In this document: positions 1 through 56,070 of the stretch, one piece after another
How positions within the stretch are numbered: position 1 is the stretch's first letter
Layout: every line of letters starts with the position of its first letter
Source of the DNA: Isurus oxyrinchus
Lineage: Eukaryota
Assembly (NCBI GenBank): GCA_026770705.1
Contig: JANJGN010000189.1
Coordinates: 496,001-560,000, forward strand
DNA: 64,000 nt
Direction of reading: 5' to 3'
Translations under genes and position numbers: made by a program
The notes under the pieces: model-generated
The model's input: the letters and a program-made list of their open reading frames with translations, nothing else
What the model was told of the DNA's origin: nothing
Database searches by the model: none

Positions 1-48
1 AAGCATAAATCATACCAAGAGAAATAATTGAGACATTCTGTGGAGCAT
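1..48 (-). CDS. Siglec A: 5' part of a C2-set Ig exon (DAPQNVSIISLGMIYA...), continues beyond the window
   Basis: AG acceptor at 49-50 (minus). The translation matches the DAPQNLS...MINASS start of the 282-nt C2 exons at 53657-56070, and the flanking intron is homologous too. Confidence 0.8.
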
Positions 49-724
49 CTAAAAACATATAAAGATTTTAATGTGAGCAAATATAGTGCACAGCAAGACT
101 CCATGCATCATGTCTCTGTATCTGATGTCTGAATGCATTTCCAGATACCTTCTCTCAGGATAAGAACTTATTTCACATTTACAATGGGCACTGCCTATGT
201 AAACTGTCACACTGCAGTTACATTCTCCCACCAGTGGAGGTGTCCATCTAGAATGCAGGAAACTCCCTTTCAGATCCTCAGGATGTCCCCAAGGGCTTCA
301 AAGGCAATGAATTGTATTTGACCAATGGCGCACTGAGGGGTAAATCTACAATTCACTGTTCAGGAGGTTGCTCCAGCCAGTTCAGTGTCTTGATGATCGG
401 GAGTTTACCTTTCATCAACAAAGATTCGGAGCTGATACTGAGACTCCAGTGCAGCACTGGGAGAGGAGAGGGAACCCACATGTTTTTGTGTGTGTATGTG
501 TGTGTTGGCTTGTGTGTGTATGTTTCTGTAAAATAAGGATCTGTGTGTGTGCACGCACTCATGTGTGTTTGTTTGTGTGNNNNNNNNNNNNNNNNNNNNN
601 NNNNNNNNNNNNNNNNNNNNNNNNNNNNNNNNNNNNNNNNNNNNNNNNNNNNNNNNNNNNNNNNNNNNNNNNNNNNNNNNNNNNNNNNNNNNNNNNNNNN
701 NNNNNNNNNNNNNNNNNNNNNNAC

Positions 725-817
725 ATTCCACAGTGATGGTTATGAACCCCTCAATTATATTGATCGATGAAGCATTAATCATATCAAGCGAAGTAAATGA
801 GAGATTCTGTGGTGCAT
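725..817 (-). CDS. Siglec A: internally deleted C2 exon, 93 nt, in frame (DAPQNLSFTSLDMINASSINIIEG/FITITVE)
   Basis: Acceptor at 818-819 and donor GT at 723-724 are intact. It lacks 189 nt (63 codons, both Ig cysteines) relative to the 282-nt paralogous exons. Confidence 0.75.
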
Positions 818-1069
818 CTAAGAACAATTAAAGATTTCATTGTGAACAAGACTCAGTACTGAGGGAGTGCTGCACTGTCAGAGGATCAGTACTGAGGGAG
901 TGCTGCAGTGTTGGAGAGTCAGTGTTCAGGGACTGCTGCAGTGTCAGAGGTGAATTTGTATCAGTTAAAGACTATTGATTTGTTGCTAAACACAATGCAG
1001 TTGTGGGATCTTGCAATATACTATGTAGAGCTTTCTAGCTAATGTAGATGGAAGGGTGTCCGTTCTTAC

Positions 1070-1366
1070 CTTGCACAGTTAGTACGAGGGTCCGCTCCGA
1101 TGAAACAGATGCATATCTCACTCTGCAGCTGAGAGTGTGTCCGTGGTGTTTGAGTGATGGGATCAGGGTCAGAACAGAAGTATAGGTCAGAGTGACACCA
1201 TGCTGAGTTACAGTGTTTGAGACTGATCCACGTACGTCAGTGGGAGTGTCCCAGGTTAAGACAGGTGCTGCTGTTCCATTGCACGTTGTGTTGAAGGTGC
1301 AGCTTACATCCACACGCTTTCCTGCAATAATTTCAGCAGGGAATATCGTGGGTTTATCTGTGAAAT
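1070..1366 (-). CDS. Siglec A: first C2-set Ig exon (DFTDKPTIFPAEIIAGKRVDVSCTFNTTCNGTAAPVLTW...LSCRVRY...LTVQ)
   Basis: 297-nt phase 1-1 exon with TTAG acceptor and GTAAG donor. It has the Ig C-W-C pattern plus the extra Cys that forms the Siglec V-C2 interdomain disulfide. Confidence 0.9.
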
Positions 1367-1609
1367 CTAACAGACAGAGAATGGATCCTTTTAGAGAAAT
1401 ATAACGTGAAGCATCAGTTCAAATAGAAATCACAGTCCCACAAGAGAAAGCACTTTTACAAGGATGATATCAGAACTGAGAGGTTACAATGATCAGGAAA
1501 GATTTTCTTGCTCTTTGGCAGTAGTGTTTCTGTCTCTCAGCTAAATACACGTTCACTCCGAGACATGTGAATTGAGAACACTGGATGAGAGAAGAGGCTC
1601 AGACCAGAG

Positions 1610-1750
1610 ATTGGAGTTAAAAGCAGAATACTGTGGATGCTGGAAATCTGAAACAAAAACAAAAATTGCTGGAAAGACTCAGCAGGTCTGACAGTATCAG
1701 TGGAGAGGAAGACAGGGTTAACGTTTCGAGTCCGTATGACTCTTCATCAG
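1610..1750. mobile_element. Short Penelope-like-element-derived repeat with a minimal hammerhead-like motif, inserted in the Siglec A V-C2 intron
   Basis: Flanked by a duplicated cagaccagag..ttgagtt target that is single-copy in the paralogous B intron (~22740). The minus strand reads CTGATGAA-GAGTC-ATACG-GACTC-GAAACGTTA. Related copies are at ~26460, 33490 and 63215. Confidence 0.55.
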
Positions 1751-2224
1751 ACCAGAGGTTTGAGTTCACTGGCTTCTCATTTCCTCAGTGATCTGGGTGA
1801 TTTATTACATTGTGGTTTGTTGAATCTTGCTGTGCACAAACTGCCTGCTGTGTTTAACATCTGTGACTACAATTCAGGAATAATTTCGTTGGCTGTGAAG
1901 GGATTTGGATCCTCCTGAGGTGGTAAATTGCGCTGCAGAAATGCACATCTTTCTTTTATCGATACGTCAGACTTTTAAACAGGACAGGAGAGATTGATGG
2001 GAGTGGTAACCTGATAATACAGTTAATGCTTTTCATCATTGATATTAAAGTGAGTATTAGAGGTTGCTTTAGGACTGAACTGGAATCTATCACCAGGTTA
2101 TTGAGAATCAGACAGTGTGTTATAATAAGCTGTGTTTTGTGTTAAAATGTAAACGTCACAGTTTGTGTTATTTCCCATTGAGTGTTGAATGTGAATTGTT
2201 GAGTAATTATAACACAGCACTTAC

Positions 2225-2590
2225 CAGACACGTGAAGCTGGGTTACAGGGTAATAGTTATGGCTCGGACCATTGTCAAATTCTATTCTGAAAAAATAAGG
2301 TCCTGCATCTTCCCGTCTGATGTTGTTTATAATCAGGGAACAGTCGCCATCTTTCAGGTCTCCAGACAGCCGGGTCCGATGGTGGAACCGTGGTAACTCG
2401 TGACTGTGATCCTTGGAGTGAAAGGCTATAGACGATGTTCTCCATTCCTCATTATTAAACCAGATTCCAACTCGTGGTTGGTTTTCCAAATGTGATGGAT
2501 AACTGTAATGACATGGAATCTGTACACACGAACTTTCCTGCGCTGTCACCTCTCGTGGAGTGTCACCTTTCCACTCTTGTGACATTCCAA
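2225..2590 (-). CDS. Siglec A: V-set sialic-acid-binding exon
   Basis: 366-nt phase 1-1 exon with Siglec hallmarks: CVQIPC, G.W, DCSL (B-E disulfide) and EDAGPYFFR carrying the essential F-strand Arg. Confidence 0.92.
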
Positions 2591-3954
2591 CTGGGGAGAG
2601 AAATATCAATATTTAACTCTGGATGGTTTGTAGATCCAATAGACTCGATATCCACCCCCTCCATCACTGGGGCACAGTGGCTGCAGTGCGGACCATCTAC
2701 AGGACACACAAGGAAATCCCCAAGGTTTCACAATGGATGGAAGAGAATCCTGGACACAGGAGTGGACAAGTTCATTCTATATTGGCTCATGGTCCTCAGG
2801 ACCCTGTTTAGCTTTTTTTCAAATTATTCATTCATGGGATTTATTACCCATCCCATCTCCATCAGAGGCATTTAAGAGTCAACCACATTGCTGAGGGTTT
2901 GGAGTGACATGTAGGCCAGACTGGGTAAGAGTGTCAGACCTCCTTCCCTATAGGTGATCAGTGAACCAGGCTTTTTAATCCCATTCATCTGCTGTGATGG
3001 GATTTACACCCAGGGCCCCAGTGCATCACCCTGGGCCTCTGGAATACTAGCCCAGTGACAATACCTCTCTGCTACCGCTTCCCCTTAGTGAAACCAGTCT
3101 TCCACCCAACACAGTGTCTACAAGACACACCAACTGAGATCCATTCAGTGCTGATTTACAAGACAGGACAATGGATTAGGAGCCCTCAGAACTCCCCCCA
3201 TTATCACCGTCATGAATCACTAATTAGCCTAACATTCCTGTCTGCTCTTCAACACAGCTGATTGGCTAATCTGATTCAATCTGATTGGTGTTCATTCCCT
3301 CTTCAATGTTTAAGGAATCACCAATCACTCGGCCTCTAGTTATTCTCCTGCCTACAAGAGGGAACATTCTCTGTCTACCCAGTCAATCAAAACCTTTCAT
3401 CTAATCCTAGTGGTGCTTGAGTATATAGTCAAGAATCCAGGGCCATGGAGCCTCAGGAGAAGAGATGGAAACCCTGTGAGGTGGAACGTCACTGAGGCCA
3501 TCCGAGTTGAAGCGACTTTTGGAGAGAATTCCAAGGCAAGATCTTCGAAGTTGAAGACTGGAATCCCTCATGAGAGAAACAGAGTTTCAGTGAGATTGGT
3601 TGACTGACAGTGTTCACTGATGTCCGGGTGGGTTGTTGTGAAATCCATGGGATCTGTCTTGGTCGCGTTTACAATTTAATGAGTAATGTGGCTGTGAGAC
3701 CACAGTTTGCCTGTTAATTCACATGAGCTCATATTAATCCAGAATGTTAGGGTATAAGGTGGATATTGTGAATTATTTTATCTTTCTGAGCTGGTGCAGT
3801 AAAGTTTATTTTTTTTTTTGTTTAAAAGCCATGGAATCTTGTAGCTTTATTCACTTTGCAGGCGTCTTAAATCTCAAACCTCGTCTACTTGAAACAAAAT
3901 ATTATTGGTTCCTAACTGTAAATTATCAAAAAAAATTGGGTGCCTGTTCCTCCA

Positions 3955-5207
3955 TCAGCAACTCTTCAGAATCCTGCTGAAGTCACGGATATTTCAGAAG
4001 GACAGGGAACAAGAGGTTTCTGGTATCAGCGTTTTGTGTGGGGCCCAGTTCAGTTTGAACAAATAAACAACACCATCTTTGAAAGTCATGAACCCACCAC
4101 AGCGGCACCTCCGACACATGCAGAGCTCAGGCGAGAGGCGCTTTGTTAGTGTGTTTCACAGTGTCTGCTGGAGTAGGGTCAGTGCTGAGAGGGTCTGCTC
4201 AAGGATCATAACAACCTGCACTTGCACCTTCCAAGTAATAAGATTTTGTAAATGTATTCATTCATGGGATGTGGGCGTCGCTGCCAAGGCCAGCATTTGC
4301 TGCCCATCTCTAATGTCCCGTGACATAATCTCTGTAGCAGAGTAGAGACAATCATGATCACTCAGGATATTTGACATCTATCCACATGAACAGCTTAGGC
4401 TTCCTTCTCTCTTTCAGTTATCTTACTCCCTTATTGAAGTTTCTAGCATGGTGAGAACTGGATGGTTTGCTCGGACATTTCAGAGGAACCACGTTGCTAT
4501 GAGTCTGGAGTCACATGTAGGCCAGACCAGATATAGACGGCAGATTTCCTTCCCTAAAGGCCATTAGTGAACCAGATGGGTGTGTATGACAATCGATGAT
4601 AGTTTCATGGTCTCCATTACTGAGACTAACTCCCATTAGTGTAAACAGAGTGAACAGTTTTCCATTGATCCCACCTTTCCCGTTCTCTCCGGTATTTTAC
4701 ACACTATTGCTCGATAATTTGATTCTGCCAAGGACCCCTTGGAAAATCATGGACCCCAGTTAGACAACCAATGGAATAAGGAATCTCTTTGGATTCTCAT
4801 TGTCTAAGGAATCTCTTTGGATCCTCATTGTCTAAGGAATCTCTTTGGATCCTCATTGTCTAAGGAATCTCTTTGGATCCTCATTGTCTAATGGATTATT
4901 TCTGATCCAAACCCCATATTGTTGTATTGTTGATTCCGATGCAGCATTGTAGACTGACTTGTCCCCAAGCTCAGCACTGACCCTACTCCAGCAGACACTG
5001 TGAAACACACTAACAAAGCGCCTCTAGCCTGAGCTCTGCATGTGTCGGAGGTGCCGCTGTGGTGGTTTCATGACTTTCAAAGATGCTGTTGTCATTTTTT
5101 TTGTTCAAACTGAACTGGGCCCCACATGAAATGCTGATACCAGAAACCTCTTCTTCCCTGTCCTTCTGAAACATCTGTGATTCAGCAGGATTCTGAAGAT
5201 TTGCTGA
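3955..5207. repeat. Inverted repeat, ~235-bp arms (3955-4189 / 4970-5207), in the Siglec A leader-V intron
   Basis: The arms are reverse complements; ORFs 3940+ and 5010- both end ESHE.TTAAPPTHAELR.EALC. Confidence 0.85.
4777..4889. repeat. 28-bp tandem repeat x4 (aaggaatctctttggatcctcattgtct)
   Basis: Read directly from the sequence. Confidence 0.9.
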
Positions 5208-6080
5208 CAAGGTTCTTAAATTGTCTGATTGTTGAATGATATAACACAGGAGGAGCTTGTTTGATCCATTGTGCATGTGCTGACTCTTTCCCAATTCCTC
5301 TCCAGCACCTTTCACACATCCCTGCAAATTTCCCTTCAAGTATTTATCCAGTTCCCCTTCTGAAAGTTCCTGTTGAATCTGCTTCCACCGCCCTTTCAGG
5401 CAGTGAGTCAATGGTCTCTCTCTGAGCTGCAAAGTGCTCAGATTCTGTGAAATTTAAACTCTGCAGCAGATCAGAAACAATTATGATAACTCAGAATATT
5501 TGACAGTTTTACACCCAGACAGCTTTGCCTTCCTTCTCTCTTTCAGTTATCTTGCTCCCTTATTGAAGTATCTAGCAAGGTGAGAATGGACAGGAAGTGT
5601 GACACTGAACAGCCTGTCTATTCTAGGAGCTGCTGTGTTGTCTTCATGGGAAATTCTGTCTAAAATCTGCAAAAGGCACACATTTCAGGTTATTGCTTTC
5701 AGAGTCCAAGCATCGGGATAGACTTCATCTCCCAGTGTTTATTCCTAATTTACTGCTCAACTCATCACTCCCCATGACTCACTGACCAGCATCCGACATC
5801 ACCTGAAGATTAAGATTCTGATCTAGCTGCTACAATCCTGCCTAACCCTCTAACCTCCTCCAGCCCCTACAACCATCCAGGACTTCTTCTATCCTCCAAT
5901 TCTGCTGTCAGACAGGGAGTCAGTGTATATCAGTGAGCACAGGGGTGATGGGTGAATGGGACTTGGTGTGAGTTTGTACACTGTCTCACTGCAGAATCAC
6001 TGCCCAATCAGAGCGCAATAAAAATGATCTTTTACAAAGACAATTAACCATAAATCTGTCCGAGCTGACGATGATATTAC

Positions 6081-6120
6081 CTTGGAGAAATGACAGGAGA
6101 AAGTAAGATTTCCCGATCAT
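6081..6120 (-). CDS. Siglec A: signal-peptide exon coding part (MIGKSYFLLSFLQ-G); full exon 6081-6160
   Basis: Polypyrimidine TTTCACAG acceptor at 6161-6162, ATG at 6120, phase-1 GTAATA donor that joins the V exon in frame. Confidence 0.85.
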
Positions 6121-6570
6121 TGTCCACTCGCAGATGTTCCATTAGCTTCTCACTCTCAAGCTGTGAAAGAGAAAGGAGTTAATAAGACCTCACCTCTTGT
6201 CTGACAGCTGTCGAGAGATCTGAACTTCTTTTAGACAATGTCATCACAGACTAATTTGATACTCTGCGGGATGATAGGTGCTCTGCAGAGAGTTACTAGG
6301 CTTTAAGAAAGAAAAACAATGAAGGACTTGCATTTCTATAGCACCTTTCACCTGCTCAGGACATCCCAAATCTCATGTCTCTGCACTTGTCTCATCCCTT
6401 GAGCTAGAAAGATGTTCTGTACAACAGACTTGAGCCCCACACCCAGATCTCAATAATCAGTAGAAATCTTTCAAAGGCATCAATCATTGGAATCTGTCTT
6501 TATAAAGTCACAACATCAACAAAGGACGGTGTTGATTGTGGAAGTGAATTCTAATCGTTCCGTTACTTAC

Positions 6571-6712
6571 CCAGGACCTGTCCGACTGCTCGCCTGGGGA
6601 GGAACTGCCCACACGTTCTGTTTGGGCTGAATGACCTCTTCCTGTGCTGATCTATCTGTGTATTTAATTAGAAAGAGCTGATGTGTCACTGTGAGTCAAA
6701 ATGAGGAAGTTG
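6571..6712 (-). promoter_or_regulatory. Siglec A: putative non-coding exon 1 and TATA-less promoter with PU.1/ETS and AP-1 motifs
   Basis: GG/GTAAGT donor at 6569-6570; AAAATGAGGAAGT at 6698-6710; TGAGTCA at 6692-6698; CAGGAAG at ~6640. The block is conserved in B. Confidence 0.55.
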
Positions 6713-6959
6713 GAGCAAACTGAGAGAAGAGCACTTTGCTGTGCACTGTCAGTAAACCCTGTGTCTGTATAAGAATATAAGAACAGAACAAGTAGGATCA
6801 GCTGGACACCCTGGCATTTTCATTCCTTATATTCCATCCACTCTTTTTTTTATCCACTCACTGAAACTATTTATCTCGCTCTACAGCCTCTTTGTGTCCT
6901 CCTCACAACTTGCTTTCCTGCTCAGTTTATATATTTCCTACCTATCTTAACCACACAGT

Positions 6960-10862: not shown

Positions 10863-11111
10863 TCAGTTTCTCTTGAATCTGATCTGTGCGTATTCCGTCT
10901 GCTCTTCCCTGTGGACAGACCCATCACCACTGGGCACCCTGAAGACTTGGGGATTGGCGTAGAGAAGCTCGTCGGGATTGTCAGGGTTCCCATGTCCAGC
11001 ATCGCCTCCCACTGCACATTCAGAGACACCCCGGGGAGCTGGGGTCTCCCCCTCGCTAGTTGTGTCTCTGGTTGTGTTCCGGGGCTCAGTAATCAGCACG
11101 TTCTGTTTACC
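10863..11111 (-). pseudogene. Orphan Siglec terminal cytoplasmic exon O1 (LLYANP; ITSM TEYAQI)
   Basis: 249-nt open exon with intact TGTAG acceptor, homologous to 50505-50741. No TM exon lies upstream in its unit. Confidence 0.7.
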
Positions 11112-11256
11112 CTACAGAGAAATGGAAACAGAAGGCATCCTCACATCATTTACTGGCACTGATAGGGTTAAAATATTCTGCAGCCTCGTTAGTGTCAGTC
11201 GTGGGTCAGTGGGTTTAACCCTCTCTCACATGTCTTATGAAAGAAAACACCTATGG

Positions 11257-11540
11257 CAGTGCAGTGCTCCCTCAGTACTGACCCTTCGATAGTGCAGCAC
11301 TTCCTCAATGCTGACCATCCAACAGTGCAGCACTCCCTCAGTACTGACCCTCCGACAGTGCAGCGCTCCCTCAGTACTGACCCTCCAGCAGTGCAGCGCT
11401 CCCTCAGTACTGACCCTCCGACAGTACAGGTCTTCCTCAGTACTGACCCTCTGACAGTGCAGCACTCCCTCAGTACTGACCCTCTGACAGTGCAGCACTC
11501 CCTCAGTACTGACCCTCTGTCAGTCTCGCACTCCCTCGGT
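11257..11540. repeat. 33-bp minisatellite (cagtgcagcactccctcagtactgaccctc[c/t]ga)
   Basis: Direct tandem units; they generate the 11-aa TVQHSLSTDPL pseudo-ORFs. Confidence 0.9.
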
Positions 11541-11666
11541 AATGGCTCTGGCAAGTGTCGGCTTGGATTCTGCACTCAGGTGCCTGGTGTGAGGCTCAAT
11601 AAAATGAATCTTGTAATCAGAGAGAGGATGAGAGAGAGAGAGAGAGATGAAGGGTCAGAGACTGAG

Positions 11667-12425
11667 CGTTATGAATCTATTAATGTATGTATTGTAATTG
11701 GAAATTGTCTTTTTAAACAGAGGTTTAGTCTGTGGGTGTGTGTGTGTGTGTTTTAATTGGATTAAAGCCAGCCGGTCTGGGTACTTTGATGTACAGTAGT
11801 TTTGAGATGTAAACAAAGAGGTAAAGAGGCATATTGCATTTTTAAAAGGAGGATTCAAAGCCTGGGAGTGAATTCTTAAACCAATCAATGTTTATATTAC
11901 TAATAAAATTGATACTATGAAACGGGAATTATAGTTAGAAGAGATGGAGATCAAAGGTCCTGATGATACAATGAGAATTTACATTCAAAGAGAAGAGCTG
12001 GGTATAACTTGAGCAGTTTTGTGTGTGCAGAGCAGAGGCTTGTAACATCAAAGCAGCTGTAAGCCTGCACCTGTCTGCAAAGGAACCAAAGTGAAAGGAA
12101 CCTCATTTGGAATTTGTGAGGTGAAAATGCTTCGCTTGGAATCTGCTTAAAGTCTATGGGTTGTCTTAGAGGACTTTAGTTTGGGAATTTGTTAAAAAGT
12201 TATGATAGTACTAGCTTGTAGCCATGTGCATATGATTAACTTGTGAAAATTAATAAATGTCTCATGTAGTTTGATATAACACCCATCTCAAGAACTGATG
12301 GTCTTATTCCTGAATTTAAAGCTGCATCTCAAACATTCCACTGGGAAATATAGGTTATGACAGTTGTTTAAAGTTTCCCTCTGGGATTTTAAACAACAGC
12401 CTTTACCAGTTGCTGTGTCATAACA
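11667..12425 (+). mobile_element. Solo-LTR-like element
   Basis: Ends (C/T)GTTATG ... CATAACA, homologous to 7228-8050, and absent from the homologous Siglec C intron (~51650). Confidence 0.6.
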
Positions 12426-12560
12426 GAGAGACAGCATGATACTGAACCATTGCTGACTCCACAGGTACAAATCAGTGGGTAACTGGGCTGGGAATCTGGG
12501 ACATGTGTTGTCTACACACTGAGATTGAAGCTTTGGAGTGAGTGTAAACAGCTCCTGTAC

Positions 12561-12642
12561 CTGGTGCTTCACAGAGAGTGGACTGGGGGTCAATGCAATG
12601 TCACTGGTCCCTGAAACTCTCTCCTCCATCGCTGTCTTTCTC
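12561..12642 (-). pseudogene. Orphan Siglec juxtamembrane cytoplasmic exon (RKTAMEERVSGTSDIALTPSPLSVKHQ)
   Basis: 82 nt with intact splice sites, near-identical to 51790-51871. Upstream homology is cut at ~12750 by a CR1 fragment. Confidence 0.7.
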
Positions 12643-12774
12643 CTGCAATAACACAATATCACACTGTGGTTATCATATAGCAGAGAGTCAGTGTAGCACA
12701 GACACAGAGCCCACTGTAATCTTAGACCAACGACTGGGACTGTCTCTTTAAATCAGTTCTATACAAAGCACAGA

Positions 12775-13230
12775 ATCAAGAAGCTTGACACCATCCAGGA
12801 CAAAGCAGCCCGATTGATCTACACCCCATCCCCCACATTAAACATTCACTCCCTCCACAACGAACACACAGTGGAAGCAGTGTGTGTACCATCTACAAGA
12901 TGCACTGCAGCAACTCAGCAAGGCACCTTCCAAACCCACGACCTCTACCATCTAGAAGGACAAGGGCAGCAGACACATGGGAACACCACCACCTGGAAGT
13001 TCCCCTCCAAGCCACTCACCATCCTGACTTGGAAATATATCATCGTTCCTTCACTGTCACTGGGTCAAAATCCTGGAGCTCCCTCCCTAACAGCACTGTG
13101 GGTGTACCTACACCACATGGACTGCAGCGGGTCAAGAAGGCTGATCACCACCACCTTCTCAAGGGCAATTAGGGATGGGCATTAATGCTGGCATCACCAG
13201 TGACAGCCACATTCGATGTAAGAATTAAAA
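12775..13230 (+). mobile_element. CR1-type LINE 3' fragment
   Basis: KKLDTIQDKAARLI-encoding sequence followed by the shared 3' tail; similar to 27960-28280 and 48260-48870. Confidence 0.8.
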
Positions 13231-13785
13231 ATCTCACAGCACAATGTATTTATTGGGATCCTCCTGCACACACGCCCTGTCGAAGGAGCCTTTGTGGTTC
13301 CATTGTTAATCGAAGCAGATCAGACTTACTGCAACTACTTGCATTTATATAGCACCTTTAATGTAGCAAAATGTCCCAAGGCTCATCCGGGAATTGTTAG
13401 TCACATCTTCACCTGACTCTGAGGCACATGAGGAGATATAAGGGACAGGAGACCAACAGCTGAGTCAACAAAGTCAGTTATTAACGGGCATCTTAAAGGA
13501 GGAGCTGGAGATAGAGAATGAGAGACAGACACAGAAAGAAAGACAGAGAGAGGGAGAGAGAGAACAAGAGAGCGAGAGAGAGAGACAGTGAATCTCGGTC
13601 CCCAGTGGCTCCGCATCCAGTCCTCTCTGGAGAAGCATTTCATTCCAAACCACACCAACCGCAGCCCAATCCCATCCCTTCCTCCCTCTCTCCCCCTCTC
13701 CCCCAGTGGGTTGTTTCCTGTTCCCAGGAATCTCAATCACTACCCCCACCCCCACACCTCCTCACTCCCACTCCCCATTTCTCAT

Positions 13786-14034
13786 TCAGTTATGCTCGAA
13801 CCTGATCTGTGCGTATTCCGTCTCCTCTTCCCTGTGGACAGACCCATCATCACTGGACATCCTCAATACTTGGGGATTGGCGTAGAGAAGGCCGTCGGGA
13901 TTGTCGATGTGCCAATGTCCAGCATCGCCTCCCAATGCACCTTCAGAGAGACCCCGGGGAGCTGGGGTCTCCCCCTCGCTAGTTGTGTCTCTGGTTGTGT
14001 TCCGGGGCTCAGAAATCAGCACGTTCTGTTTACC
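13786..14034 (-). pseudogene. Orphan Siglec terminal cytoplasmic exon O2 (LLYANP; ITSM TEYAQI)
   Basis: 249-nt open exon with intact acceptor. Its upstream intron runs into a minisatellite and then the oppositely oriented Siglec B promoter. Confidence 0.7.
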
Positions 14035-15862: not shown

Positions 15863-15902
15863 ATGATCGGGAAATCTTACTTCCTCCTGTCACTTCTCCA
15901 AG
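15863..15902 (+). CDS. Siglec B: signal-peptide exon coding part (MIGKSYFLLSLLQ-G)
   Basis: TTTCAG acceptor at 15819-15820, ATG at 15863, phase-1 GTAATA donor at 15903. Confidence 0.85.
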
Positions 15903-19795: not shown

Positions 19796-20161
19796 CTGGA
19801 CTACCACAAGTGTGGAAAGGTGACACTCCACAAGAGGTGACAGCGCAGGAAGGTTCGTGTGTACAGATTCCGTGTCATTACAGCTACCCATCATATTTAG
19901 TACCGAGATCACCTGTTGGAATCTGGTATATGAGAAGGAATTGGGAAACATGGTCTATAGCCTTTCACTCCAAGGATCACAGTCGCGAGTTACCACGGTT
20001 CCACCATCGGACCCGGCTTTCTGGAGACCTGAAAGATGGTGACTGTTCCCTGATTATAAACAACATCAGACGGGAAGATGCAGGATATTATTTATTCAGA
20101 ACAGATTTTGACAGCAGGAATAGATACAACGACCGTCCTGAAACCCAGCTTCATGTTTCTG
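19796..20161 (+). CDS. Siglec B: V-set exon V1 (loop-divergent)
   Basis: 366-nt phase 1-1 open exon, CCTAG acceptor and GTAAGT donor; CVQIPC, DCSL and YYLFR with the essential Arg retained. Confidence 0.88.
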
Positions 20162-21775: not shown

Positions 21776-21892
21776 ATTTGTTGCCATTCTCCTCAGTATT
21801 GACCATCCCCCCAATTCAGCCTCATCTGTAAATATCGGGTTCAGTGGATCCACAAACCATTCAGAGTTAAATATTGAGATTTCTCTCCCCAG

Positions 21893-22258
21893 CTGAACCC
21901 TCGCAAGAGTGGAAAGGTGACAATCCACGAGAGGTGACAGTGCAGGAATGTTCCTGTGTACAGATTCCATGTCATTACAGTTATCCATCGTGTCTGGAAA
22001 ACCAACCGCGAGGTGGAGTCTGGTTTAATAATGAGGAATGGAGAACATCGTCTATAGCCTTTCACTCCAAGGATCACAGTCACGAGTTACCACGGTTCCA
22101 CCATCGGACCCGGCTGTCTGGAGACCTGAAAGATGGCGACTGTTCCCTGATTATAAACAACATCAGACGGGAAGATGCGGGACCTTATTTTTTCAGAATA
22201 GAATTTGACAATGGTCTGAGCCATAACTATTACCCTGTAACCCAGGTTCACGTTTCTG
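21893..22258 (+). CDS. Siglec B: V-set exon V2 (near-identical to the Siglec A V exon)
   Basis: 366-nt phase 1-1 open exon, CCCAG acceptor and GTAAGT donor; YFFR Arg retained; two extra Cys. Confidence 0.88.
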
Positions 22259-22986: not shown

Positions 22987-23283
22987 ATTTCACAGATAAA
23001 CCCACGATATTCCCTGCTGAAATTATCGCAGGAAAGCCTGTGGATGTAAGCTGCACCTTCAACACAACGTGCAATGGAACAGCAGCACCTGTCTTAACCT
23101 GGGATACTCCCACTGACGTACCTGGATCAGTCTCAAACACTGTAACTCAGCATGGTGTCACTCTGACCTATACTTCTGTTCTGACCCTGATCCCATCACT
23201 CAAACACCACAGACACACTCTCAGCTGCAGAGTGAGATATCCATCTGTTGCATCGGAGCGGACCCTCGTACTAACTGTGCAAG
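22987..23283 (+). CDS. Siglec B: first C2-set exon
   Basis: 297-nt phase 1-1 exon, near-identical to 1070-1366. Confidence 0.9.
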
Positions 23284-23604
23284 GTAAGTACAGACACCCT
23301 TCATTCTACATCAGCACTCCCTCAGCGCTGACCCTCTGACAGTGCAGCCCGTTCTCAGTGTCCACATTCTCATGCCTCTCAAAGTGCTTCACAGTCGATA
23401 GAAGTTAACTGATCTTTATTTGATTGTTGCTGAATGAAGAGACAAGCTGTCTAAACTTTACATCTCACACACATTATTTTCCATGGCAACACCTCCTCCA
23501 ATCAGAGACCACTTGCTGATTAACCAGCACTCTCTTCCCTTTAAATATAAATTGTTGTTCACTTTCTGTTGGTAAACCTGCAATCTGTCTTGTTGAGTCC
23601 GGTC

Positions 23605-23758
23605 CTGACATCTGAATATCACAATGAACAGAACAAGTTCCAACAATGAGCTGTGGTTGGTGATTCCTCACGTTACATCCAGGGACACTGGAGACTATCA
23701 GTGTGCTCAGAGAATGAACATGGAGCAGTGGAGGGGTTCATAACCATCACTGTGGAAC
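23605..23758 (+). pseudogene. Siglec B: dead C2 exon (3' half only)
   Basis: Matches MNRTSSNNELWLVIPHVTSRDTGDYQC. The acceptor and 5' half are replaced by unrelated sequence, and there is a 1-nt frameshift after the Cys (TGTGCTCAGAG vs TGTGTGGCAGAG). Confidence 0.8.
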
Positions 23759-24872: not shown

Positions 24873-25012
24873 ACAGTGGAGGAGAGATTCTGCACGTGAT
24901 CCTGATCCTGGGAATACGAGCTGTGATATTCCTTGTGGCTGTGGTTATCACTATCGCTGGAGTCTGTGTCTGGGAGAGACAAACAGTGAAAGGAAGTCGA
25001 CAGACTGTTTGA
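24873..25012 (+). CDS. Siglec B: terminal TM exon, activating type (DSGGEILHVILILGIRAVIFLVAVVITIAGVCVWERQTVKGSRQTV*)
   Basis: TTCTCTAG acceptor at 24871-24872, phase 1 in frame with the C2 exon. Hydrophobic helix with an internal Arg, short Tyr-free tail, TGA at 25010-25012, AATAAA at 25396. Confidence 0.8.
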
Positions 25013-46537: not shown

Positions 46538-46572
<35 letters not shown>

Positions 46573-50504: not shown

Positions 50505-50741
50505 TCAGTTTTTCTGGAACCTGATCTGTGCGTATTCCGTGTCCTCGCTCCTGTGCACAGTCCTGTCACCGCCGGGCAGCTTTGAAAAGTTGATGTTGGC
50601 ATAGAAAAGCTCGTCGGGTTTGTCGGGGTTCCCATGTCCAACATCGCCTCCCACTGGACCTTCAGAGAGACCCCGGGGAGCTGGGGTCTCCCCCTCACTA
50701 GTTGTGTTCCGGGGCTCAGTAATCAGCACGTTCTGTTTACC
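50505..50741 (-). CDS. Siglec C: terminal cytoplasmic exon with ITIM-like LFYANI and ITSM TEYAQI
   Basis: 237-nt phase-0 exon with TGTAG acceptor; the two-tyrosine layout is as in CD33-related Siglecs. Confidence 0.88.
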   Translation of the reverse strand, partial: GKQNVLITEPRNTTSEGETPAPRGLSEGPVGGDVGHGNPDKPDELFYANINFSKLPGGDRTVHRSEDTEYAQIRFQKN

Positions 50742-51189: not shown

Positions 51190-51578
51190 CTCTCAGTGCT
51201 CTCTGCTGACAGTGCAGCACTCCCTCGGAACTGCCCCTTCAAGAGGGCAGCACCCCTTGAAAATGGACTCTTTGACAGTGCAGCACTCACTCAGTACTGT
51301 CCTCAGTACTGACCATCCGACAGTGCAGCACTCCCTCAGTACTGACCCTCCGACAGTGCAGCACTCCCTCAGTACTGACCGTCCGACAGTCCAGCACTCC
51401 CTCAGTACTGACCCTATGACAGCGCAGCACTCCCTCAGTACTGACCCTCTGACAGTCTAGCTCTCCCTCAGTACAGACCCTCTGACAGTGCAACACTCCC
51501 TCAGTACTGACCTTCTGACACTCCAGCACTCCCTCAGCACAGACCCTAGGACAGTGCAGCACTCCCTCACTACTGACA
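51190..51578. repeat. 33-bp minisatellite
   Basis: Tandem units. Confidence 0.88.
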
Positions 51579-51789
51579 TCAGGTGCCTTGTCATTATTGC
51601 GTTCAGGTTTCTGGTCAAAGAGCGAGTGATGGAGGGAAGAGGGGGAGGGAGCGAGAGACAATGCTACCTACTGAGCCATATCTGACTCCACAGGTAGATA
51701 TCTGTGGGTAACCTGGCTGGGAATCTGGGACATGTGTTGTCTACAAACTGAGATAGAAGCTTTGGAGTGAGTGTAAACAGCTCCTGTAC

Positions 51790-51871
51790 CTGGTGCTTCA
51801 CAGAGAGTGGACTGGGGGTCAATACAATGTCACTGGTCCCTGAACCTCTCTCCTCCATCGCTGTCTTTCTC
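51790..51871 (-). CDS. Siglec C: juxtamembrane cytoplasmic exon (RKTAMEERGSGTSDIVLTPSPLSVKHQ)
   Basis: 82 nt, phase 2-0; joins the TM and terminal exons in frame. Confidence 0.85.
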
Positions 51872-52749
51872 CTGCAATAACACAATATCACACTGTGGTT
51901 ATCATATAGCAGAGAGTCAGTGCAGCACAGACACAGAGCCCAGTGTAACCTTACACCAACGACTGGACTGTCTCTAGTTCCAATAAGGGGTATCAGCGTG
52001 ACATCACTATAATGGAAGTGTGTCATGTGATCCAATCTCAGTTTGACTTTTGCTTTGAGCAGAACACACACTCACAGCTCTGATGCCTTCAATCTTTCTC
52101 CATATGTATAACTGTTCTCGTGCCGAGTCTTGATAAACAAATCATTAAAATTCTCACCCAATCCCTGTGAGCGATTGGTGCTTTGTTTCTTGTACAATAA
52201 ATAAGCCTAAGGTATAATATCATTATAATGACACGCCATATCTTTGACCCACCCTCCACCCCTGCTCTTCCCCCCATAGCCCTTCAAATGTTCCCCCTTC
52301 AAGTATTTATCCAATTCCCCTTTTGAAAGATCCTATTAAATCTGCTTCGAGCGCCCTTTCAGGCAGCACCTTCCAGATCACAGCAACTGATTATTATTCA
52401 TCTGGATAACGGGCAATGAAAAACACTGTCTGGATCGTAAGGGACAAAAGAGACCAGTTACGGAGAGGCATCTGGCGCTTAACACAAGGGAAACAATCAC
52501 CGACTTCAGGAAAGAACATTGAAGCAAATATTTATCCAGGAGTAATCGTGCAGAGTGAGGAATCTCTGGGTCTCGTGATTGTTTACCTGGATACAGGACA
52601 ATGAAAGGTTCTCTCCGGATCAGAGTGGACACAAGGATCACTTACAGAGAGGGACCTGGTGCTGATCCCAAGGGAAACAATCACCGACTTAAGGAAAGAA
52701 CATTGAAGCAAATGTTTATATTAAAATCAAGTTAAATCTTCAGACTTAC

Positions 52750-52846
52750 TTTCTCACACAGATGAAGATGAAGATTCCAGCCAGGAAAACACTCAACATG
52801 ATCCCAGCCGTGAACAATCCTACTGTCCATTTACTGGAGTCTCTAC
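52750..52846 (-). CDS. Siglec C: uncharged TM exon (RRDSSKWTVGLFTAGIMLSVFLAGIFIFICVRK)
   Basis: TTTTTACAG acceptor, GTAAGT donor, 97 nt phase 1-2, hydrophobic helix. Confidence 0.88.
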
Positions 52847-53656
52847 CTGTAAAAACAGCCATTAATTACTGCACTACAGGTTTACAATGATGCTCCGATG
52901 TATCTCGAGAAGCGATACACTCACTCAGTGTTTAAATACTCATTCTCGGGCAATGCTGACATTTATTGTCCATCCCTAGTTTCCCCTTGAGAAGGTGGTG
53001 GGCGGTCTTCCTCCTGAACCACTGGTTTGTCCCAAACTGGGAGACCAGTTCAGAGGGCAGGTGTGAGTTAACCATGTTGGTGTCTGAGACTGGAGTCACA
53101 TCCACATCGAGACATGCTTCCCTCCCTAAAGGGTATGTAGTCTCTACACATGTAACAACCAACCTCACTGAAATAATCGACTATCAGGTCATTATCACAC
53201 GGTGGTTTGCGGGATCTTGCTGTGCACAAATCAGTACCTGTGTTTCCTACATTACAACAGTGAGCTCACTTCGATAATGCTGCATTGGCTGTTGAATGTT
53301 TAGTAATTTCTAAGCAATTTATGAATACAATAGTTGCATTTCAACATGTAACATTTATATATAATATTTATCAATTAAAGAATGAGATGTTCAGCAATTA
53401 AAAGGGTTGTTCAGGACAGTTAGAGAGAGAAAGGTCATCAAGTACGGAGATTGGAAACGAAGACGTGACAGCCTTGTCCTCACAACCATTGAAGGAGAAA
53501 CTGAGAGCAAAAACAGAAAGGGAGAGGAAAAATTGGGTGTGTGGATAACGTGGACTGAGCGAGGATTGAAGAAAACTGGATTAAAAACAACACGATCCCA
53601 ATGGCTCCACGGAGACCACGGAGACAACAAACAAACAAATGTATCTCCACACTCAC

Positions 53657-53938
53657 GTTCCACAGTGATGGTTATGAACGCCTCCACTGCTCCATGTTCA
53701 TTCTCTGCCACACACTGATAGTCTCCAGTGTCCCTGGATGTAACGTGAGGAATCACCAACCACAGCTCATTGTTGGAACTTGTTCTGTTCATTGGGACAT
53801 TAAGATGTCGCCACATCAGGTTAGAAGCTGGGAAGCTCTCGACAGAGCAGATTATCACTGCAGAATTCCCCTCAATTATATTGATTGATGAAGCGTAAAT
53901 CATATTAAGCGAAGTAAATGAGAGATCCTGTGGTGCAT
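53657..53938 (-). CDS. Siglec C: membrane-proximal C2-set exon
   Basis: 282 nt, open, C...W...DTGDYQC. Confidence 0.88.
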
Positions 53939-54678
53939 CTAAAAACAAATCAAGTGTTTAATGTGAGCAAACCTATTGCACAGCAAGACTCCATGCATCA
54001 TCTCTCTGTATCTGATGTCTGAATGCATTTCCAGGTAACTTCCCTCAGGATAACGTCTTATGCCACATTTTTAATGAACACTGCCTATGTAAACTGTCAC
54101 ACTGCAGTTGCATTCTCCCACCAGTAGAGGTGTTGTCCATCTAGAATGAAAGAAGCTTGCTTTCACATCCTCAGGATTTCGCAAAGGGCTGGACAGGCAA
54201 TGAATTGTATTTGATTGATGGAGCACTGAGGGGTAAATCTACAATTCTCTGTTCAGGAGGTTGCTCATCCAATTCAGGGTCTTGTTGATCTGGAGTTTAC
54301 CTTCCTTCAACACAGAATCGGAGCTGATACCAAGACTCCAGTGCGGCACTGAGAGAGGAGAGGGAACTCACGTGTGTGTATCTGTGTGTTTGTGTTTCTG
54401 CACATGTGAGTGTGTTTGTGTGTGTATGCACACATGTGTCTGTGTGTGCGCATGCGCATGTGTCTGTGTGTCTAGGTCTGTCCATGAGTGAGAGTATGTG
54501 TATGTGTGTGTCTATGTGTGGGCATGAATGTGTGTGTGTGTTTGAGATGGGTGTGTATTTTCCTGTGTATGTGCTTGTATGTGTATGACTGTGTGTGGAT
54601 AATTATGCATGTGTGTGCCTACAGGTTTCTGTCTGTGTGTGTGTGTGTCTGTGTGTGTGTGCGTGTGTGTGTGTGTGT

Positions 54679-54719
<41 letters not shown>

Positions 54720-54745
54720 TGATGTTGGAGTTTGCAGTAACTCAC

Positions 54746-55026
54746 GTTCCACAGTGATGGTTATGAACCCCTCCACTGCTCCATGTTCATTCTCTGCCAC
54801 ACACTGATAGTCTCCAGTGTCCCTGGATGTAACGTGAGGAATCACCAACCACAGCTCATTGTTGGAACTTGTTCTGTTCATTGGGACATTAAGATGTCGC
54901 CACGTCAGGTTAGAAGCTGGGAAGCTCTCGACAGAGCAGATTATCACTGCAGAATTCCCCTCAATTATATTGATCGATGAAGCGTTAATCATATCAAGAG
55001 AATTAATTGAGAGATTCTGGGTGCGT
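54746..55026 (-). pseudogene. Siglec C: C2 exon with a 1-nt deletion just after the acceptor (281 nt)
   Basis: AG/ACGCACC-CAGAAT versus AG/ATGCACCACAG in a sister exon; the remainder is intact. Confidence 0.7.
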
Positions 55027-55788
55027 CTAAAAGAAATAAAGATTTTAATGTGAGCAAGCATAGTGCACAGCAAGACTCCATGCATCATCTCTCTGTATCT
55101 GATGTTGGAATGCTTTTCCAGGTACCTTCCCTCATGAAAAATTACTGTCATATTTATAATGGACACTTCCTATGTAAACTGTCACACTGCAGTTGCTTCC
55201 TCCCACCAGTAGAGTTGCTAACCCTCTAGAATGAAAGAAACATCCTTTAACACTCTCAAGATGTCCCCAAGGGCTTGATAGGCAATGAATTGTATTTGAT
55301 CGATGGAGCACTGAGGGCTAAATCTACATTTCTCTGTTCAGGAGGTTGCTCATCCAATTCAGGGTCTTGCTGATCTGGAGTTTACCTTCCTTCAGCACAG
55401 AATGGGAGCTGACACCAAGACTCCAGTGCAGAACTGAGAGAGGAGAGGGAGCTCACACTTGTGTGTGTACTTCTGCACGTGAGTTTGTATTTGTGTGTAT
55501 GCGCGTGTCTGTNNNNNNNNNNNNNNNNNNNNNNNNNNNNNNNNNNNNNNNNNNNNNNNNNNNNNNNNNNNNNNNNNNNNNNNNNNNNNNNNNNNNNNNN
55601 NNNNNNNNNNNNNNNNNNNNNNNNNNNNNNNNNNNNNNNNNNNTATGTGTGAGTTGAGTTTGTGTGTGTTTCTGTGTATGTGTTTGAACGTATGTTTGTG
55701 TGTAAGCGTGCATGTTTGTGTCTACACATGAGTGTTTTTGCATGTGTGAGTGTGTGTGTGAGAGATGTTGAAGTCTGTGTACACTCAC

Positions 55789-56070
55789 ATTCCACAGTGA
55801 TGGTTATGAATCCCTCCACTGCTCCATGTTCATTCTCTGCCACACACTGATAGTCTCCAGTGTCCCTGGATGTAACGTGAGGAATCACCAACCACAGCTC
55901 ATTGTTGCAACTTGTTCTGTTCATTGGGACATTAAGATGTTGCCACGTCAGGTTAGAAGCTGGGAAGCTCTCGACAGAGCAGATTATCACTGCAGAATTC
56001 CCCTCAATTATATTGATCGATGAAGCATTAATCATTTCAAGAGAAGTAAATGTGAGATTCTGTGGAGCAT
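55789..56070 (-). CDS. Siglec C: most 5' visible C2-set exon
   Basis: 282 nt, open, with an extra Cys in RTSCNN. Confidence 0.85.

What the first reader, a model, noticed from the sequence alone, without database searches (positions are those of the whole stretch)
1..56070. Candidate paired activating/inhibitory Siglec receptor system in a shark-like genome
Seen: Siglec B ends in a TM helix with an internal Arg (ILILGIRAVIFLV) and a short Tyr-free tail. Siglec C, built from the same C2 family, has an uncharged TM and an LFYANI + TEYAQI tail. B's V2 and C2 exons are almost identical to those of the head-to-head gene A, whose downstream C2 repeats and introns match inhibitory C. Known: charged-TM Siglecs (Siglec-14 Arg, Siglec-15/16 Lys) signal through DAP12 and pair with ITIM Siglecs (5/14, 11/16), kept alike by gene conversion; SIGLEC11/16 are also head-to-head. 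Inference: an independently evolved paired-Siglec system, possibly countering sialic-acid mimicry by pathogens. A's tail lies outside the window, so A being inhibitory is inferred.
Basis: partly seen in the sequence, partly recalled or inferred. Interest (0 to 1): 0.9.

Follow-up and report, generated by a model that had tools for sequence, protein, structure and literature searches.

The report
Shark Siglec pair: activating-type and inhibitory

Summary
Gene B (+ strand) has a leader, two V-set exons, one C2 exon and a terminal exon, 24873-25012. That exon encodes a membrane helix with an internal Arg and a 13-residue tail without Tyr. Contigs of three public runs carry the predicted joint 23283>24873. 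The same Arg helix (invariant VILILGIRA) ends annotated Siglec-like proteins of Scyliorhinus torazame and Chiloscyllium punctatum. Gene C (- strand) has an uncharged membrane helix and an LFYANI (ITIM) plus TEYAQI (ITSM) tail. The V exons hit Siglec-5, Siglec-8 and CD33 best, and the sialic-acid Arg is aligned.

A and B lie head to head, with leaders about 9.7 kb apart, inside an inverted duplication. Two tracts of about 420 nt at 97% identity cover the exons and 100-170 nt of adjoining intron. The rest of the intron is 78-82% identical, which looks like gene conversion.

Not shown: A's tail lies outside the window, and A's only C2-repeat exon here is internally deleted beside a gap. Adaptor binding and sialic-acid binding were not tested. 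No assembly gap cuts an exon that the claims rest on.

NCBI already names such shark proteins Siglecs; I found no paper on them. Unchecked scan notes report the same layout at other loci of this genome. I rate it a new variant of a known kind, of moderate to high interest.

The parts
15863..15902 (+). Gene B leader exon (MIGKSYFLLSLLQ, donor GTAAT)
   Evidence: It matches the loose end that a run X1 contig carries in front of the V1 exon, with 3 mismatches in 30.
19796..20161 (+). Gene B V-set exon V1 (366 nt, phase 1-1; canonical Arg in YYLFRTD)
   Evidence: Pfam V-set 1.7e-13 and Ig_CD22 4.8e-9. Splice sites. It groups with the first V domain of the Cetorhinus ITIM protein P0004, support 100/96.
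21893..22258 (+). Gene B V-set exon V2 (366 nt; canonical Arg in YFFRIE)
   Evidence: Best solved-structure hit is Siglec-5, E 5.5e-14, with the Arg aligned. The joint 22258>22987 is seen in runs X1, X6 and X8. It is 94.3% identical in nt to A's V exon.
22987..23283 (+). Gene B C2-set exon (297 nt)
   Evidence: Pfam C2-set_2 6e-8. Hits to MAG, Siglec-10 and CD33 domain 2. It differs from A's C2 exon at 7 of 297 nt.
23496..23758 (+). Decayed C2-repeat pseudo-exon of B. Its 3' half is like C's repeats, its 5' half cannot be aligned, and it has in-frame stops. The window also lacks 1 nt after 23705.
   Evidence: Alignment. One X4 contig joins 23758 to 24873, and all four runs carry an extra T after 23705. 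The start coordinate is only where that contig begins; the acceptor was not found.
24873..25012 (+). Gene B terminal coding exon: Arg-containing membrane helix plus a 13-residue tail without Tyr, stop at 25010-25012. The 3' UTR runs on to the AATAAA at 25396.
   Evidence: The joint 23283>24873 (GT..AG) is in X1, X6 and X8. Homologous C-termini in P0006, P0020, P0074 and P0154. 25280-25424 matches C's 3' UTR. polyA signal.
6081..6120 (-). Gene A leader exon (MIGKSYFLLSFLQ)
   Evidence: It lies in the inverted duplication 5837-6730 vs 16146-15255, 90% identical.
2225..2590 (-). Gene A V-set exon (single V; its 5' end is of the first-V type, and from about nt 90 on it is V2-like)
   Evidence: Pfam V-set 2.1e-12. 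Coordinates. Pattern of informative sites.
1070..1366 (-). Gene A C2-set exon
725..817 (-). Gene A C2-repeat exon remnant (93 nt, in frame, 189 nt lost internally). Its donor abuts gap 580-722.
1..506 (-). Gene A intron, homologous to the introns that precede C's C2 repeats. A runs off the window here.
   Evidence: 84-86% identity to 53891-54395, 54980-55457 and 56023-56525.
53657..56070 (-). Gene C: three tandem C2-repeat exons at 56070-55789, 55026-54746 (281 nt, one nt short, so out of frame as assembled) and 53938-53657.
   Evidence: Pfam Ig_3 and I-set. Alignment, coordinates.
52750..52846 (-). Gene C membrane exon, uncharged helix
   Evidence: An X1 contig's loose end matches 52817-52844 exactly, following a C2-repeat exon end.
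51790..51871 (-). Gene C cytoplasmic exon ((K)RKTAMEERGSGTSDIVLTPSPLSVKHQ)
   Evidence: Collinear with Cetorhinus P0004.
50508..50741 (-). Gene C tail exon with ITIM LFYANI and ITSM TEYAQI
   Evidence: Both motifs align collinearly with the C-terminus of a turtle CD33-related-like protein, E 0.002.
10866..14034 (-). 3' end remnant between A and B: tail exon 14034-13789, cytoplasmic exon 12642-12561 and tail exon 11111-10866. All have open frames and good acceptors. The tails read LLYANP...TEYAQI. No membrane exon was found.
   Evidence: Carcharodon XP_041037179 (P0016) has the same tail type.

Best explanation
The window holds part of a multigene cluster of CD33-related-type Siglec receptors in a shark.

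Genes A and B arose by an inverted duplication and face each other head to head. B encodes a type I membrane protein: leader, two V-set lectin domains (each with the canonical sialic-acid Arg), one C2 domain, and a membrane helix with a buried Arg followed by a 13-residue tail without Tyr. Relatives such as C carry an uncharged helix and an ITIM plus ITSM tail.

The likely mechanism is that of paired receptors. The ITIM/ITSM forms would recruit SHP-type phosphatases and dampen the cell. B would pair through its Arg with an Asp-bearing signalling adaptor dimer of the DAP12, DAP10 or FcR-gamma type and activate the cell on binding the same ligands. Gene conversion would keep the ligand-binding exons of A and B alike.

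Shown here: the exon structure, the splicing, conservation of the Arg helix across shark orders, Siglec-type sequence features, and the conversion-like tracts. Inferred: adaptor coupling, sialic-acid binding, A's inhibitory tail, and the biological role.
For: - Siglec features. The V exons match Pfam V-set and Ig_CD22. The best solved-structure hits for V2 are all Siglecs: Siglec-5 at 5.5e-14, then Siglec-8, CD33, Siglec-10, Siglec-7, sialoadhesin, MAG and Siglec-15. YFFRIE aligns to the YFFRVE of Siglec-5, and the Cys pattern is kept.
- The exon. Phase-compatible acceptor, membrane helix with Arg, then a stop. A polyA signal follows at 25396.
- Splicing. The joints 22258>22987 and 23283>24873, both GT..AG, appear in contigs of three runs from three studies and two organism labels.
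- Conservation. Homologous Arg helices end XP_072326180, XP_072325011 and a pIgR-like protein of S. torazame, and XP_072409577 of C. punctatum, with VILILGIRA invariant.
- Inhibitory relatives. ITIM/ITSM tails occur in C and in Cetorhinus, Stegostoma, Hemiscyllium and S. canicula proteins; the closest Carcharodon proteins keep only the ITSM.
- Tail architecture. C's tail aligns collinearly with a turtle CD33-related-like tail.
- Conversion-like tracts. The A-B identity profile shows two tracts of about 420 nt at 97% that reach into introns; the rest of the intron is 78-82% identical (p = 1.9e-8 and 3.5e-4).
- Family pattern. In the V-domain tree, catshark Arg-helix proteins group with an S. 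canicula ITIM protein, and B's V1 groups with a Cetorhinus ITIM protein.
Against: - A's membrane and tail exons are not in the window. Its only C2-repeat exon here is internally deleted next to a gap, so A may be defective or misassembled.
- C has no V exon in the window, and its second repeat is 1 nt short.
- The C2 contigs laid on B carry A-like letters at 5 of the 7 sites that tell A from B. The expressed copy in those runs is therefore not letter for letter the window's B.
- The C2 side of the key joint is only 22-30 nt long and is identical in A and B.
- The runs' RNA status is a guess by the tool. It is supported only by the GT..AG joints themselves.
- No adaptor, ligand or cell type was tested.
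- One run (X4) shows only a form that includes the decayed exon and has a 1-nt loss in the membrane exon. It probably comes from a paralogue.
Confidence: 0.65

Rival explanations
1. B is a by-product of the inversion that split an ancestral ITIM gene: a truncated, decaying copy. On this reading, the transcripts laid on it come from intact paralogues elsewhere in the genome.
For: - A 3' end of ITIM type but without a membrane exon lies stranded between A and B.
- B holds a decayed C2-repeat pseudo-exon with stops and a 1-nt loss.
- The laid C2 contigs differ from B at 5 sites.
- Unchecked scan notes report other Arg-helix exons in this genome.
Against: - All five coding exons of B are open, with consensus splice sites.
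- An X1 contig matches the Arg exon and its 3' UTR without a single difference over 205 nt.
- An 11-nt loose end in front of the C2 exon in an X1 contig matches the end of V2 exactly; A's V exon and B's V1 each differ by 1 nt there.
- The architecture V(n)-C2-Arg helix recurs in S. torazame.
Confidence: 0.12
2. B is a real receptor, but its Arg helix does not couple to an ITAM adaptor. It could act as a ligand sink or decoy. Alternatively, the Arg could serve assembly or retention with another partner, or the conserved C-terminal QTV could engage a PDZ scaffold.
For: - The tail ...SRQTV-COOH is conserved in B, P0006 and P0074 and fits a class I PDZ-ligand pattern (the pattern is from general knowledge).
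- No adaptor evidence was obtained here.
Against: - The Arg and the residues around it are invariant across three shark orders, while the rest of the helix varies.
- In known immune receptor families, a buried basic residue combined with a short tail lacking Tyr marks adaptor pairing (PMC7226832; PMC5701461 for Siglec-14, -15 and -16).
Confidence: 0.15
3. The family is Siglec-like in fold only and recognises something other than sialic acid. The pairing would then serve another ligand system.
For: - No binding test was possible.
- Tandem V-set domains, two to six per protein, occur in several annotated shark and ray proteins of this family but, as far as I recall, in no mammalian Siglec.
- Some human Siglecs bind ligands without using the canonical Arg (abstract of PMC12953582, seen).
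Against: The canonical Arg, the flanking aromatic residues and the Siglec Cys pattern are kept in V1, V2 and A's V.
Confidence: 0.15

Closest known systems
Human SIGLEC11 / SIGLEC16 pair
   Same: Both are head-to-head genes about 9 kb apart; here the leaders are 9.7 kb apart. In both, the 5' exons (V-set and C2) are kept nearly identical by gene conversion. One partner carries ITIMs; the other has a charged membrane residue and a short tail (PMC5701461).
   Different: The charged residue here is Arg, not Lys. The Arg exon is shared by three shark orders, so it is far older than the primate pair. B has two V-set domains. A's inhibitory tail has not been seen. The coding part of the Arg exon has no detectable DNA similarity to the ITIM genes' membrane or tail exons; only the 3' UTR matches.
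Human Siglec-5 / Siglec-14 pair
   Same: Siglec-5 is the best solved-structure match of B's V2.
   Different: The human genes lie in tandem rather than inverted, and the pair is confined to primates. Binding of Siglec-14 to DAP12 has been shown; nothing comparable has been shown here.
Tetrapod CD33-related Siglecs
   Same: The V-set plus C2 ectodomain, and a tail with a membrane-proximal ITIM (L-x-Y-A-x-[IV]-x-F) and a C-terminal TEY-x-x-I motif in the same order and spacing. The nearest hits outside cartilaginous fishes are Xenopus, turtle and mammalian CD33-related-like proteins.
   Different: Teleost genomes are reported to lack this subgroup (PMC7226832). The shark family also has tandem V-sets and long arrays of one repeated C2 exon. 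Orthology and synteny were not tested.
Annotated shark proteins with the same Arg helix (XP_072326180, XP_072325011, XP_072409577)
   Same: They carry the same terminal exon, S-x-G-E-x-L-x-VILILGIRA...TVKGS(RQTV), and the same V and C2 families.
   Different: The numbers of V and C2 domains differ. They are automatic gene models named Siglec-12, Siglec-13 or CD33-like, and I found no published analysis of them.

Membership tests
Siglec (I-type lectin) family | N-terminal V-set Ig domain most similar to Siglec V-sets | tested here: met
   Pfam V-set and Ig_CD22 pass their cut-offs for all three V exons. The top 18 solved-structure hits for V2 are all Siglecs, with E from 5.5e-14 to 4.7e-7.
Siglec (I-type lectin) family | Canonical sialic-acid-binding Arg on strand F | tested here: met
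   YFFRIE of V2 aligns to YFFRVE of Siglec-5 and YFFRLE of Siglec-8. V1 has YLFRTD and A's V has YFFRIE.
Siglec (I-type lectin) family | Siglec Cys pattern: an intrasheet disulfide (CxxxPC ... DCSL) plus an extra Cys for the bond to the first C2 domain, and the C-x5-C motif in that C2 domain | tested here: met
   By sequence only. CVQIPC and DCSL align with the Siglec-5 Cys residues. The C2 exon has SCTFNTTC. No structure was predicted.
Siglec (I-type lectin) family | Binding of sialylated glycans | not testable with these tools
   Needs glycan arrays with Fc fusions and mutants of the canonical Arg.
CD33-related Siglec subgroup | Cytoplasmic tail with a membrane-proximal ITIM and a distal ITIM-like or ITSM motif | tested here: met
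   C has LFYANI and TEYAQI. Both align collinearly with a turtle CD33-related-like C-terminus. The alignment to a mammalian protein is weaker.
CD33-related Siglec subgroup | Orthology or synteny with the tetrapod CD33-related cluster | not tested
   No flanking genes were available. The V-domain tree is unresolved at depth.
Paired activating/inhibitory receptors (Siglec-5/14, Siglec-11/16 type) | Activating member: basic residue inside the membrane helix and a short tail without signalling Tyr | tested here: met
   Conserved in four proteins from other sharks.
Paired activating/inhibitory receptors (Siglec-5/14, Siglec-11/16 type) | The charged-helix exon is used in mature transcripts | tested here: met
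   The joint 23283>24873 appears in runs X1, X6 and X8. Caveats: these are contigs, the shorter side of the joint is 22-30 nt, and the RNA status of the runs is a guess by the tool.
Paired activating/inhibitory receptors (Siglec-5/14, Siglec-11/16 type) | An inhibitory partner with a near-identical ectodomain | tested here: inconclusive
   A shares 94-98% of its V and C2 exons with B, but its tail is off the window. C has the tail but no V exon here. At family level, the V domains of Arg-helix and ITIM proteins group together within a lineage.
Paired activating/inhibitory receptors (Siglec-5/14, Siglec-11/16 type) | Ectodomain exons homogenised by gene conversion | tested here: met
   Two tracts at 97% identity with sharp edges reach 100-170 nt into introns, against 78-82% in the rest of the intron. 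This is a pattern only; no population or outgroup data were used.
Paired activating/inhibitory receptors (Siglec-5/14, Siglec-11/16 type) | Association with an ITAM or YxxM adaptor through the charged residue | not testable with these tools
   No shark adaptor sequence was in hand, and complex prediction was not run.

The most novel reading that the evidence does not exclude
Cartilaginous fishes have a true CD33-related-type Siglec family, with tails built like those of tetrapods, so this subgroup would date back to early jawed vertebrates. It would also come with an activating-type Arg-helix partner that has persisted since before three shark orders split (on the order of 200 million years, from general knowledge). 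Recurrent gene conversion would keep that partner matched to the inhibitory members. This would be a long-lived paired-receptor system with tandem lectin domains, unlike the short-lived mammalian pairs.
Probability: 0.4. Interest if true: 0.75.

Novelty: new variant of a known kind. Interest (0 to 1): 0.6.

Why it matters
Paired activating and inhibitory Siglecs are read as traces of an arms race with pathogens that mimic host sialic acids, and so far they are described in mammals. CD33-related inhibitory Siglecs are reported to be missing from (teleost) fish genomes (PMC7226832). A shark family would change that picture if it holds up: it has the same tail architecture, an Arg-helix partner conserved across shark orders, a head-to-head layout, and conversion-like tracts. 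It would show either very deep ancestry or striking convergence of this receptor logic. It would also give comparative immunologists a concrete pair (A and B) to test for ligand sharing and adaptor use.

Tried and rejected
- **The look-up of encoding contigs.** A's tail stays unknown.
- **The search for homologous proteins on the C-terminal 50 residues of P0006.** It returned only two S. torazame proteins out of 12 candidates. Because of the length and word filters, this says little about how widespread the exon is.
- **The C2-repeat-like exon ending at 23758 as a productive exon of B.** Rejected. Its 5' half cannot be aligned to C's repeats and it has in-frame stops in every usable frame.
- **A C-type membrane exon near the stranded tail exons at 10.8-14 kb.** None was found at word size 9.
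- **DNA similarity between B's Arg exon and C's membrane or tail exons.** None was found; only the 3' UTR matches.
- **Literature.** Searches for shark or chondrichthyan Siglecs and for DAP12 or FcR-gamma in sharks gave nothing specific.
- **Left out on purpose.** No N run was filled in.

Full report
**Layout**

The window is repeat-rich vertebrate DNA with seven N runs. Stop-to-stop reading frames, Pfam and a self-comparison show three Ig-receptor genes.

- **Gene A (- strand):** leader 6120-6081, V-set exon 2590-2225, C2 exon 1366-1070, and a 93-nt remnant of a C2-repeat exon at 817-725. The remnant abuts gap 580-722. A then runs off the left edge.
- **Gene B (+ strand):** leader 15863-15902, V1 19796-20161, V2 21893-22258, C2 22987-23283, a decayed C2-repeat pseudo-exon ending at 23758, and the terminal exon 24873-25012 with AATAAA at 25396.
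- **Gene C (- strand):** three C2-repeat exons (56070-55789, 55026-54746, 53938-53657), membrane exon 52846-52750, cytoplasmic exon 51871-51790 and tail exon 50741-50508. C has no V exon in the window.

A and B sit in an inverted duplication, 1038-6730 against 23315-15255. Their leaders face each other 9.7 kb apart.

**Gaps**

None of the N runs interrupts an exon used here.

- 580-722 begins 2 nt after the donor of A's remnant exon. Its left flank matches the intron that precedes C's repeats, so the order is plausible. The 189-nt internal loss in that exon may still be an assembly fault.
- 55513-55643 lies in the intron between C's repeats 1 and 2. That unit is 1043 nt against 1089 nt for the next one. 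This fits continuity but does not fix the number of repeat copies.
- The other gaps lie outside genes.

**The observation**

- Exon 24873-25012 follows a pyrimidine tract and an AG. It is in phase with the C2 donor at 23283 and reads (D)SGGEILHVILILGIRAVIFLVAVVITIAGVCVWERQTVKGSRQTV-stop. That is a helix with one buried Arg and a tail without Tyr.
- C's helix, WTVGLFTAGIMLSVFLAGIFIFICV, is uncharged. Its tail carries LFYANI (ITIM pattern) and TEYAQI (ITSM pattern).
- A's and B's C2 exons differ at 7 of 297 nt. A's V exon and B's V2 exon differ at 21 of 366 nt.

**Is the Arg exon used?**

I laid the contigs of four public runs on 19500-25100. Three runs (X1, X6, X8), from three studies and two organism labels, carry GT..AG joints at 22258>22987 (V2 to C2) and at 23283>24873.

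The C2 side of that joint is only 22-30 nt long. This is expected: the nearest site that tells A from B (23250) lies 33 nt from the exon end, and a k-mer graph branches there.

An X1 contig matches the Arg exon and its 3' UTR without any difference over 205 nt.

The laid C2 contigs carry A-like letters at 5 of the 7 sites that tell A from B. Yet an 11-nt loose end in front of the C2 exon in an X1 contig matches the end of V2 exactly, while A's V exon and B's V1 each differ by 1 nt there. The expressed copy in those animals is therefore a B-type gene with a different conversion pattern, not letter for letter the window's B.

Run X4 shows only a form that joins 23758 to 24873 and has a 1-nt loss inside the membrane exon. 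It is most likely a paralogue.

The tool only guesses that these runs are RNA. The intron-sized GT..AG skips are the evidence that spliced RNA is present.

**Family**

The best solved-structure matches of V2 are all Siglecs: Siglec-5 at 5.5e-14, then Siglec-8, CD33, Siglec-10, Siglec-7, sialoadhesin, MAG, Siglec-15 and CD22. The sialic-acid Arg is aligned (YFFRIE against YFFRVE) and the Siglec Cys pattern is kept. The C2 exon hits domain 2 of MAG, Siglec-10 and CD33.

A search of 1.84 billion representative proteins gave annotated shark and ray proteins as the closest relatives. They are named Siglec-5, -8, -10, -11, -12, -13, -14 or -15, CD33-like or MAG-like, and come from Carcharodon, Cetorhinus, Mustelus, Scyliorhinus, Chiloscyllium, Stegostoma, Hemiscyllium, Rhincodon, Pristiophorus, Pristis, Hypanus, Hemitrygon, Mobula, Leucoraja and Rhinoraja. 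The best hits outside cartilaginous fishes are CD33-related-like proteins of Xenopus, a turtle and mammals.

**Conservation of the Arg helix**

Four representative proteins end in the same exon:

| Protein | Species | C-terminal sequence |
|---|---|---|
| XP_072326180 | S. torazame | ...SGGENLDVILILGIRAVIFIVVVIITVAGICVCERRTVKGSRQTV |
| XP_072325011 | S. torazame | ...SGGENLDVILILGIRAVIFTVIVVITVAGICVWERQRVKGSRQTV |
| 'pIgR-like', five or six V domains plus C2 | S. torazame | ...SGGENLDVILILGIRAVIFTVVVVITVAGICVWETNS |
| XP_072409577 | C. punctatum | ...SRGEILHVILILGIRAGIFIVAVVLTVAGVCVSEGQTVKGS |

VILILGIRA is invariant while later helix positions vary. The exon therefore predates the split of the lamniform-like, carcharhiniform and orectolobiform lineages and is under constraint.

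ITIM/ITSM tails like C's occur in Cetorhinus, Stegostoma, Hemiscyllium and S. canicula proteins; the closest Carcharodon proteins (P0016, P0151) keep only the ITSM. C's tail aligns collinearly, both motifs included, with the C-terminus of a turtle CD33-related-like protein (E 0.002 pairwise). The alignment to a mammalian protein is weaker.

**Two V domains**

The V1-to-V2 junction would read ...HVS-A-EPSQEW, which is the linker found in annotated twin-V shark proteins. X1 contigs contain joints from the end of one V exon to the start of another. In the V-domain tree, B's V1 groups with the first V of the Cetorhinus ITIM protein (100/96). B's V2 and A's V sit next to the second Cetorhinus V and the Carcharodon V.

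The V domains of catshark Arg-helix proteins group with those of an S. canicula ITIM protein (100/99). V domains thus cluster by lineage rather than by tail type, as expected of paired families under concerted evolution.

**Gene conversion**

Along the A-B alignment, identity behaves as follows:

| B coordinates | What it covers | Identity in 60-column windows |
|---|---|---|
| up to 22009 | upstream flank and first third of V2 | 85-90% |
| 22010-22429 | last two thirds of V2 plus 171 nt of intron | 93-100% |
| 22430-22729 | intron | 68-78% |
| 22762-22881 | intron | 80-85% |
| 22882-23301 | 105 nt of intron plus C2 | 95-98% |
| beyond 23301 | | alignment ends |

Counting intron positions only, there are 6 mismatches in 171 inside the first tract against 61 in 282 outside it (p = 1.9e-8). 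For the second tract the figures are 3 in 105 against 21 in 120 (p = 3.5e-4). This mosaic is what conversion tracts look like. It parallels SIGLEC11/16, which are also head to head about 9 kb apart (PMC5701461).

**Origin of B's last exon**

25280-25424, which includes the polyA signal, is homologous to the 3' UTR of C's tail exon and of the stranded tail at 10 kb. The coding part has no detectable DNA match in the window. Between A and B lies an ITIM-type 3' end without a membrane exon. This fits an inversion that separated the 5' half of an ancestral inhibitory gene from its 3' half.

**Verdict**

The paired-receptor reading is well supported at the level of the family and of B. It is not proven for the specific A-B pair, because A's tail is unseen. 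Adaptor coupling and ligand binding remain inferences.

Automatic annotation already lists such proteins. I found no paper on them, and a teleost study states that fish genomes lack CD33-related Siglecs (PMC7226832). Unchecked scan notes report the same layout at other loci of this genome.

Noticed in passing
window 10866-14034 (-): An ITIM-type 3' end is stranded between the two head-to-head genes: tail exons at 14034-13789 and 11111-10866 and a cytoplasmic exon at 12642-12561. All have open frames and good acceptors, but there is no membrane exon. The tails read LLYANP (Pro at +3, so no longer an ITIM) plus TEYAQI, the same tail type as Carcharodon XP_041037179.
   Followed up: partly
window 23705; 55026-54746; 817-725: Three small coding defects in the assembly. 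The window lacks one T after 23705 relative to contigs of all four runs. C's second C2 repeat is 281 nt instead of 282, so it is out of frame. A's C2-repeat exon has lost 189 nt next to a gap. Whether these are assembly errors or real lesions could not be told.
   Followed up: partly
window 23496-23758 (+): A decayed C2-repeat pseudo-exon in B. Its 3' half is about 97% like C's repeats and its 5' half cannot be aligned. A contig of run X4 joins it to the Arg exon; that form has in-frame stops.
   Followed up: yes
window 24998-25009 (+); P0006, P0074: The Arg-helix proteins end in ...SRQTV-COOH, conserved between the window and S. torazame. This fits a class I PDZ-ligand pattern (S/T-x-V at the C-terminus).
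   Followed up: no
window 11257-11541, 14292-15046, 25744-26458, 43396-43682, 51301-57370 (two arrays), 58773-59130: A 33-bp satellite (consensus ...GACAGTGCAGCACTCCCTCAGTACTGACCCTC...) sits in the intron before each tail exon. It also occurs just downstream of B and at other places, so it may mark a mobile or recombination-prone unit that carries tail exons around. An earlier scan note reports a tail exon spliced to hepcidin exons 4.8 kb beyond the window.
   Followed up: partly
P0012 (XP_051901316, Pristis pectinata, 'MAG-like'): A sawfish member of the family has an uncharged helix and a tail with YQEL-x7-YSEL. This fits the ITAM pattern, so rays may have a second, built-in activating form.
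   Followed up: no
P0154 (S. torazame, 987 aa); P0002 (Hypanus sabinus): Family members with four to six tandem V-set domains, each keeping the canonical Arg motif. As far as I recall, this architecture is unknown among mammalian Siglecs.
   Followed up: partly
window 35682-37090 and 39779-41025; 59994-62758: Two arrays of a 37-bp satellite in opposite orientation flank a 2.7-kb segment. A 74-bp satellite fills 2.8 kb near the right end.
   Followed up: no
window 8118-8683 (-), 27905-29705 (-), 48881-49378 (-): Fragments of reverse-transcriptase-like reading frames (LINE-type remnants) lie between the receptor genes.
   Followed up: no
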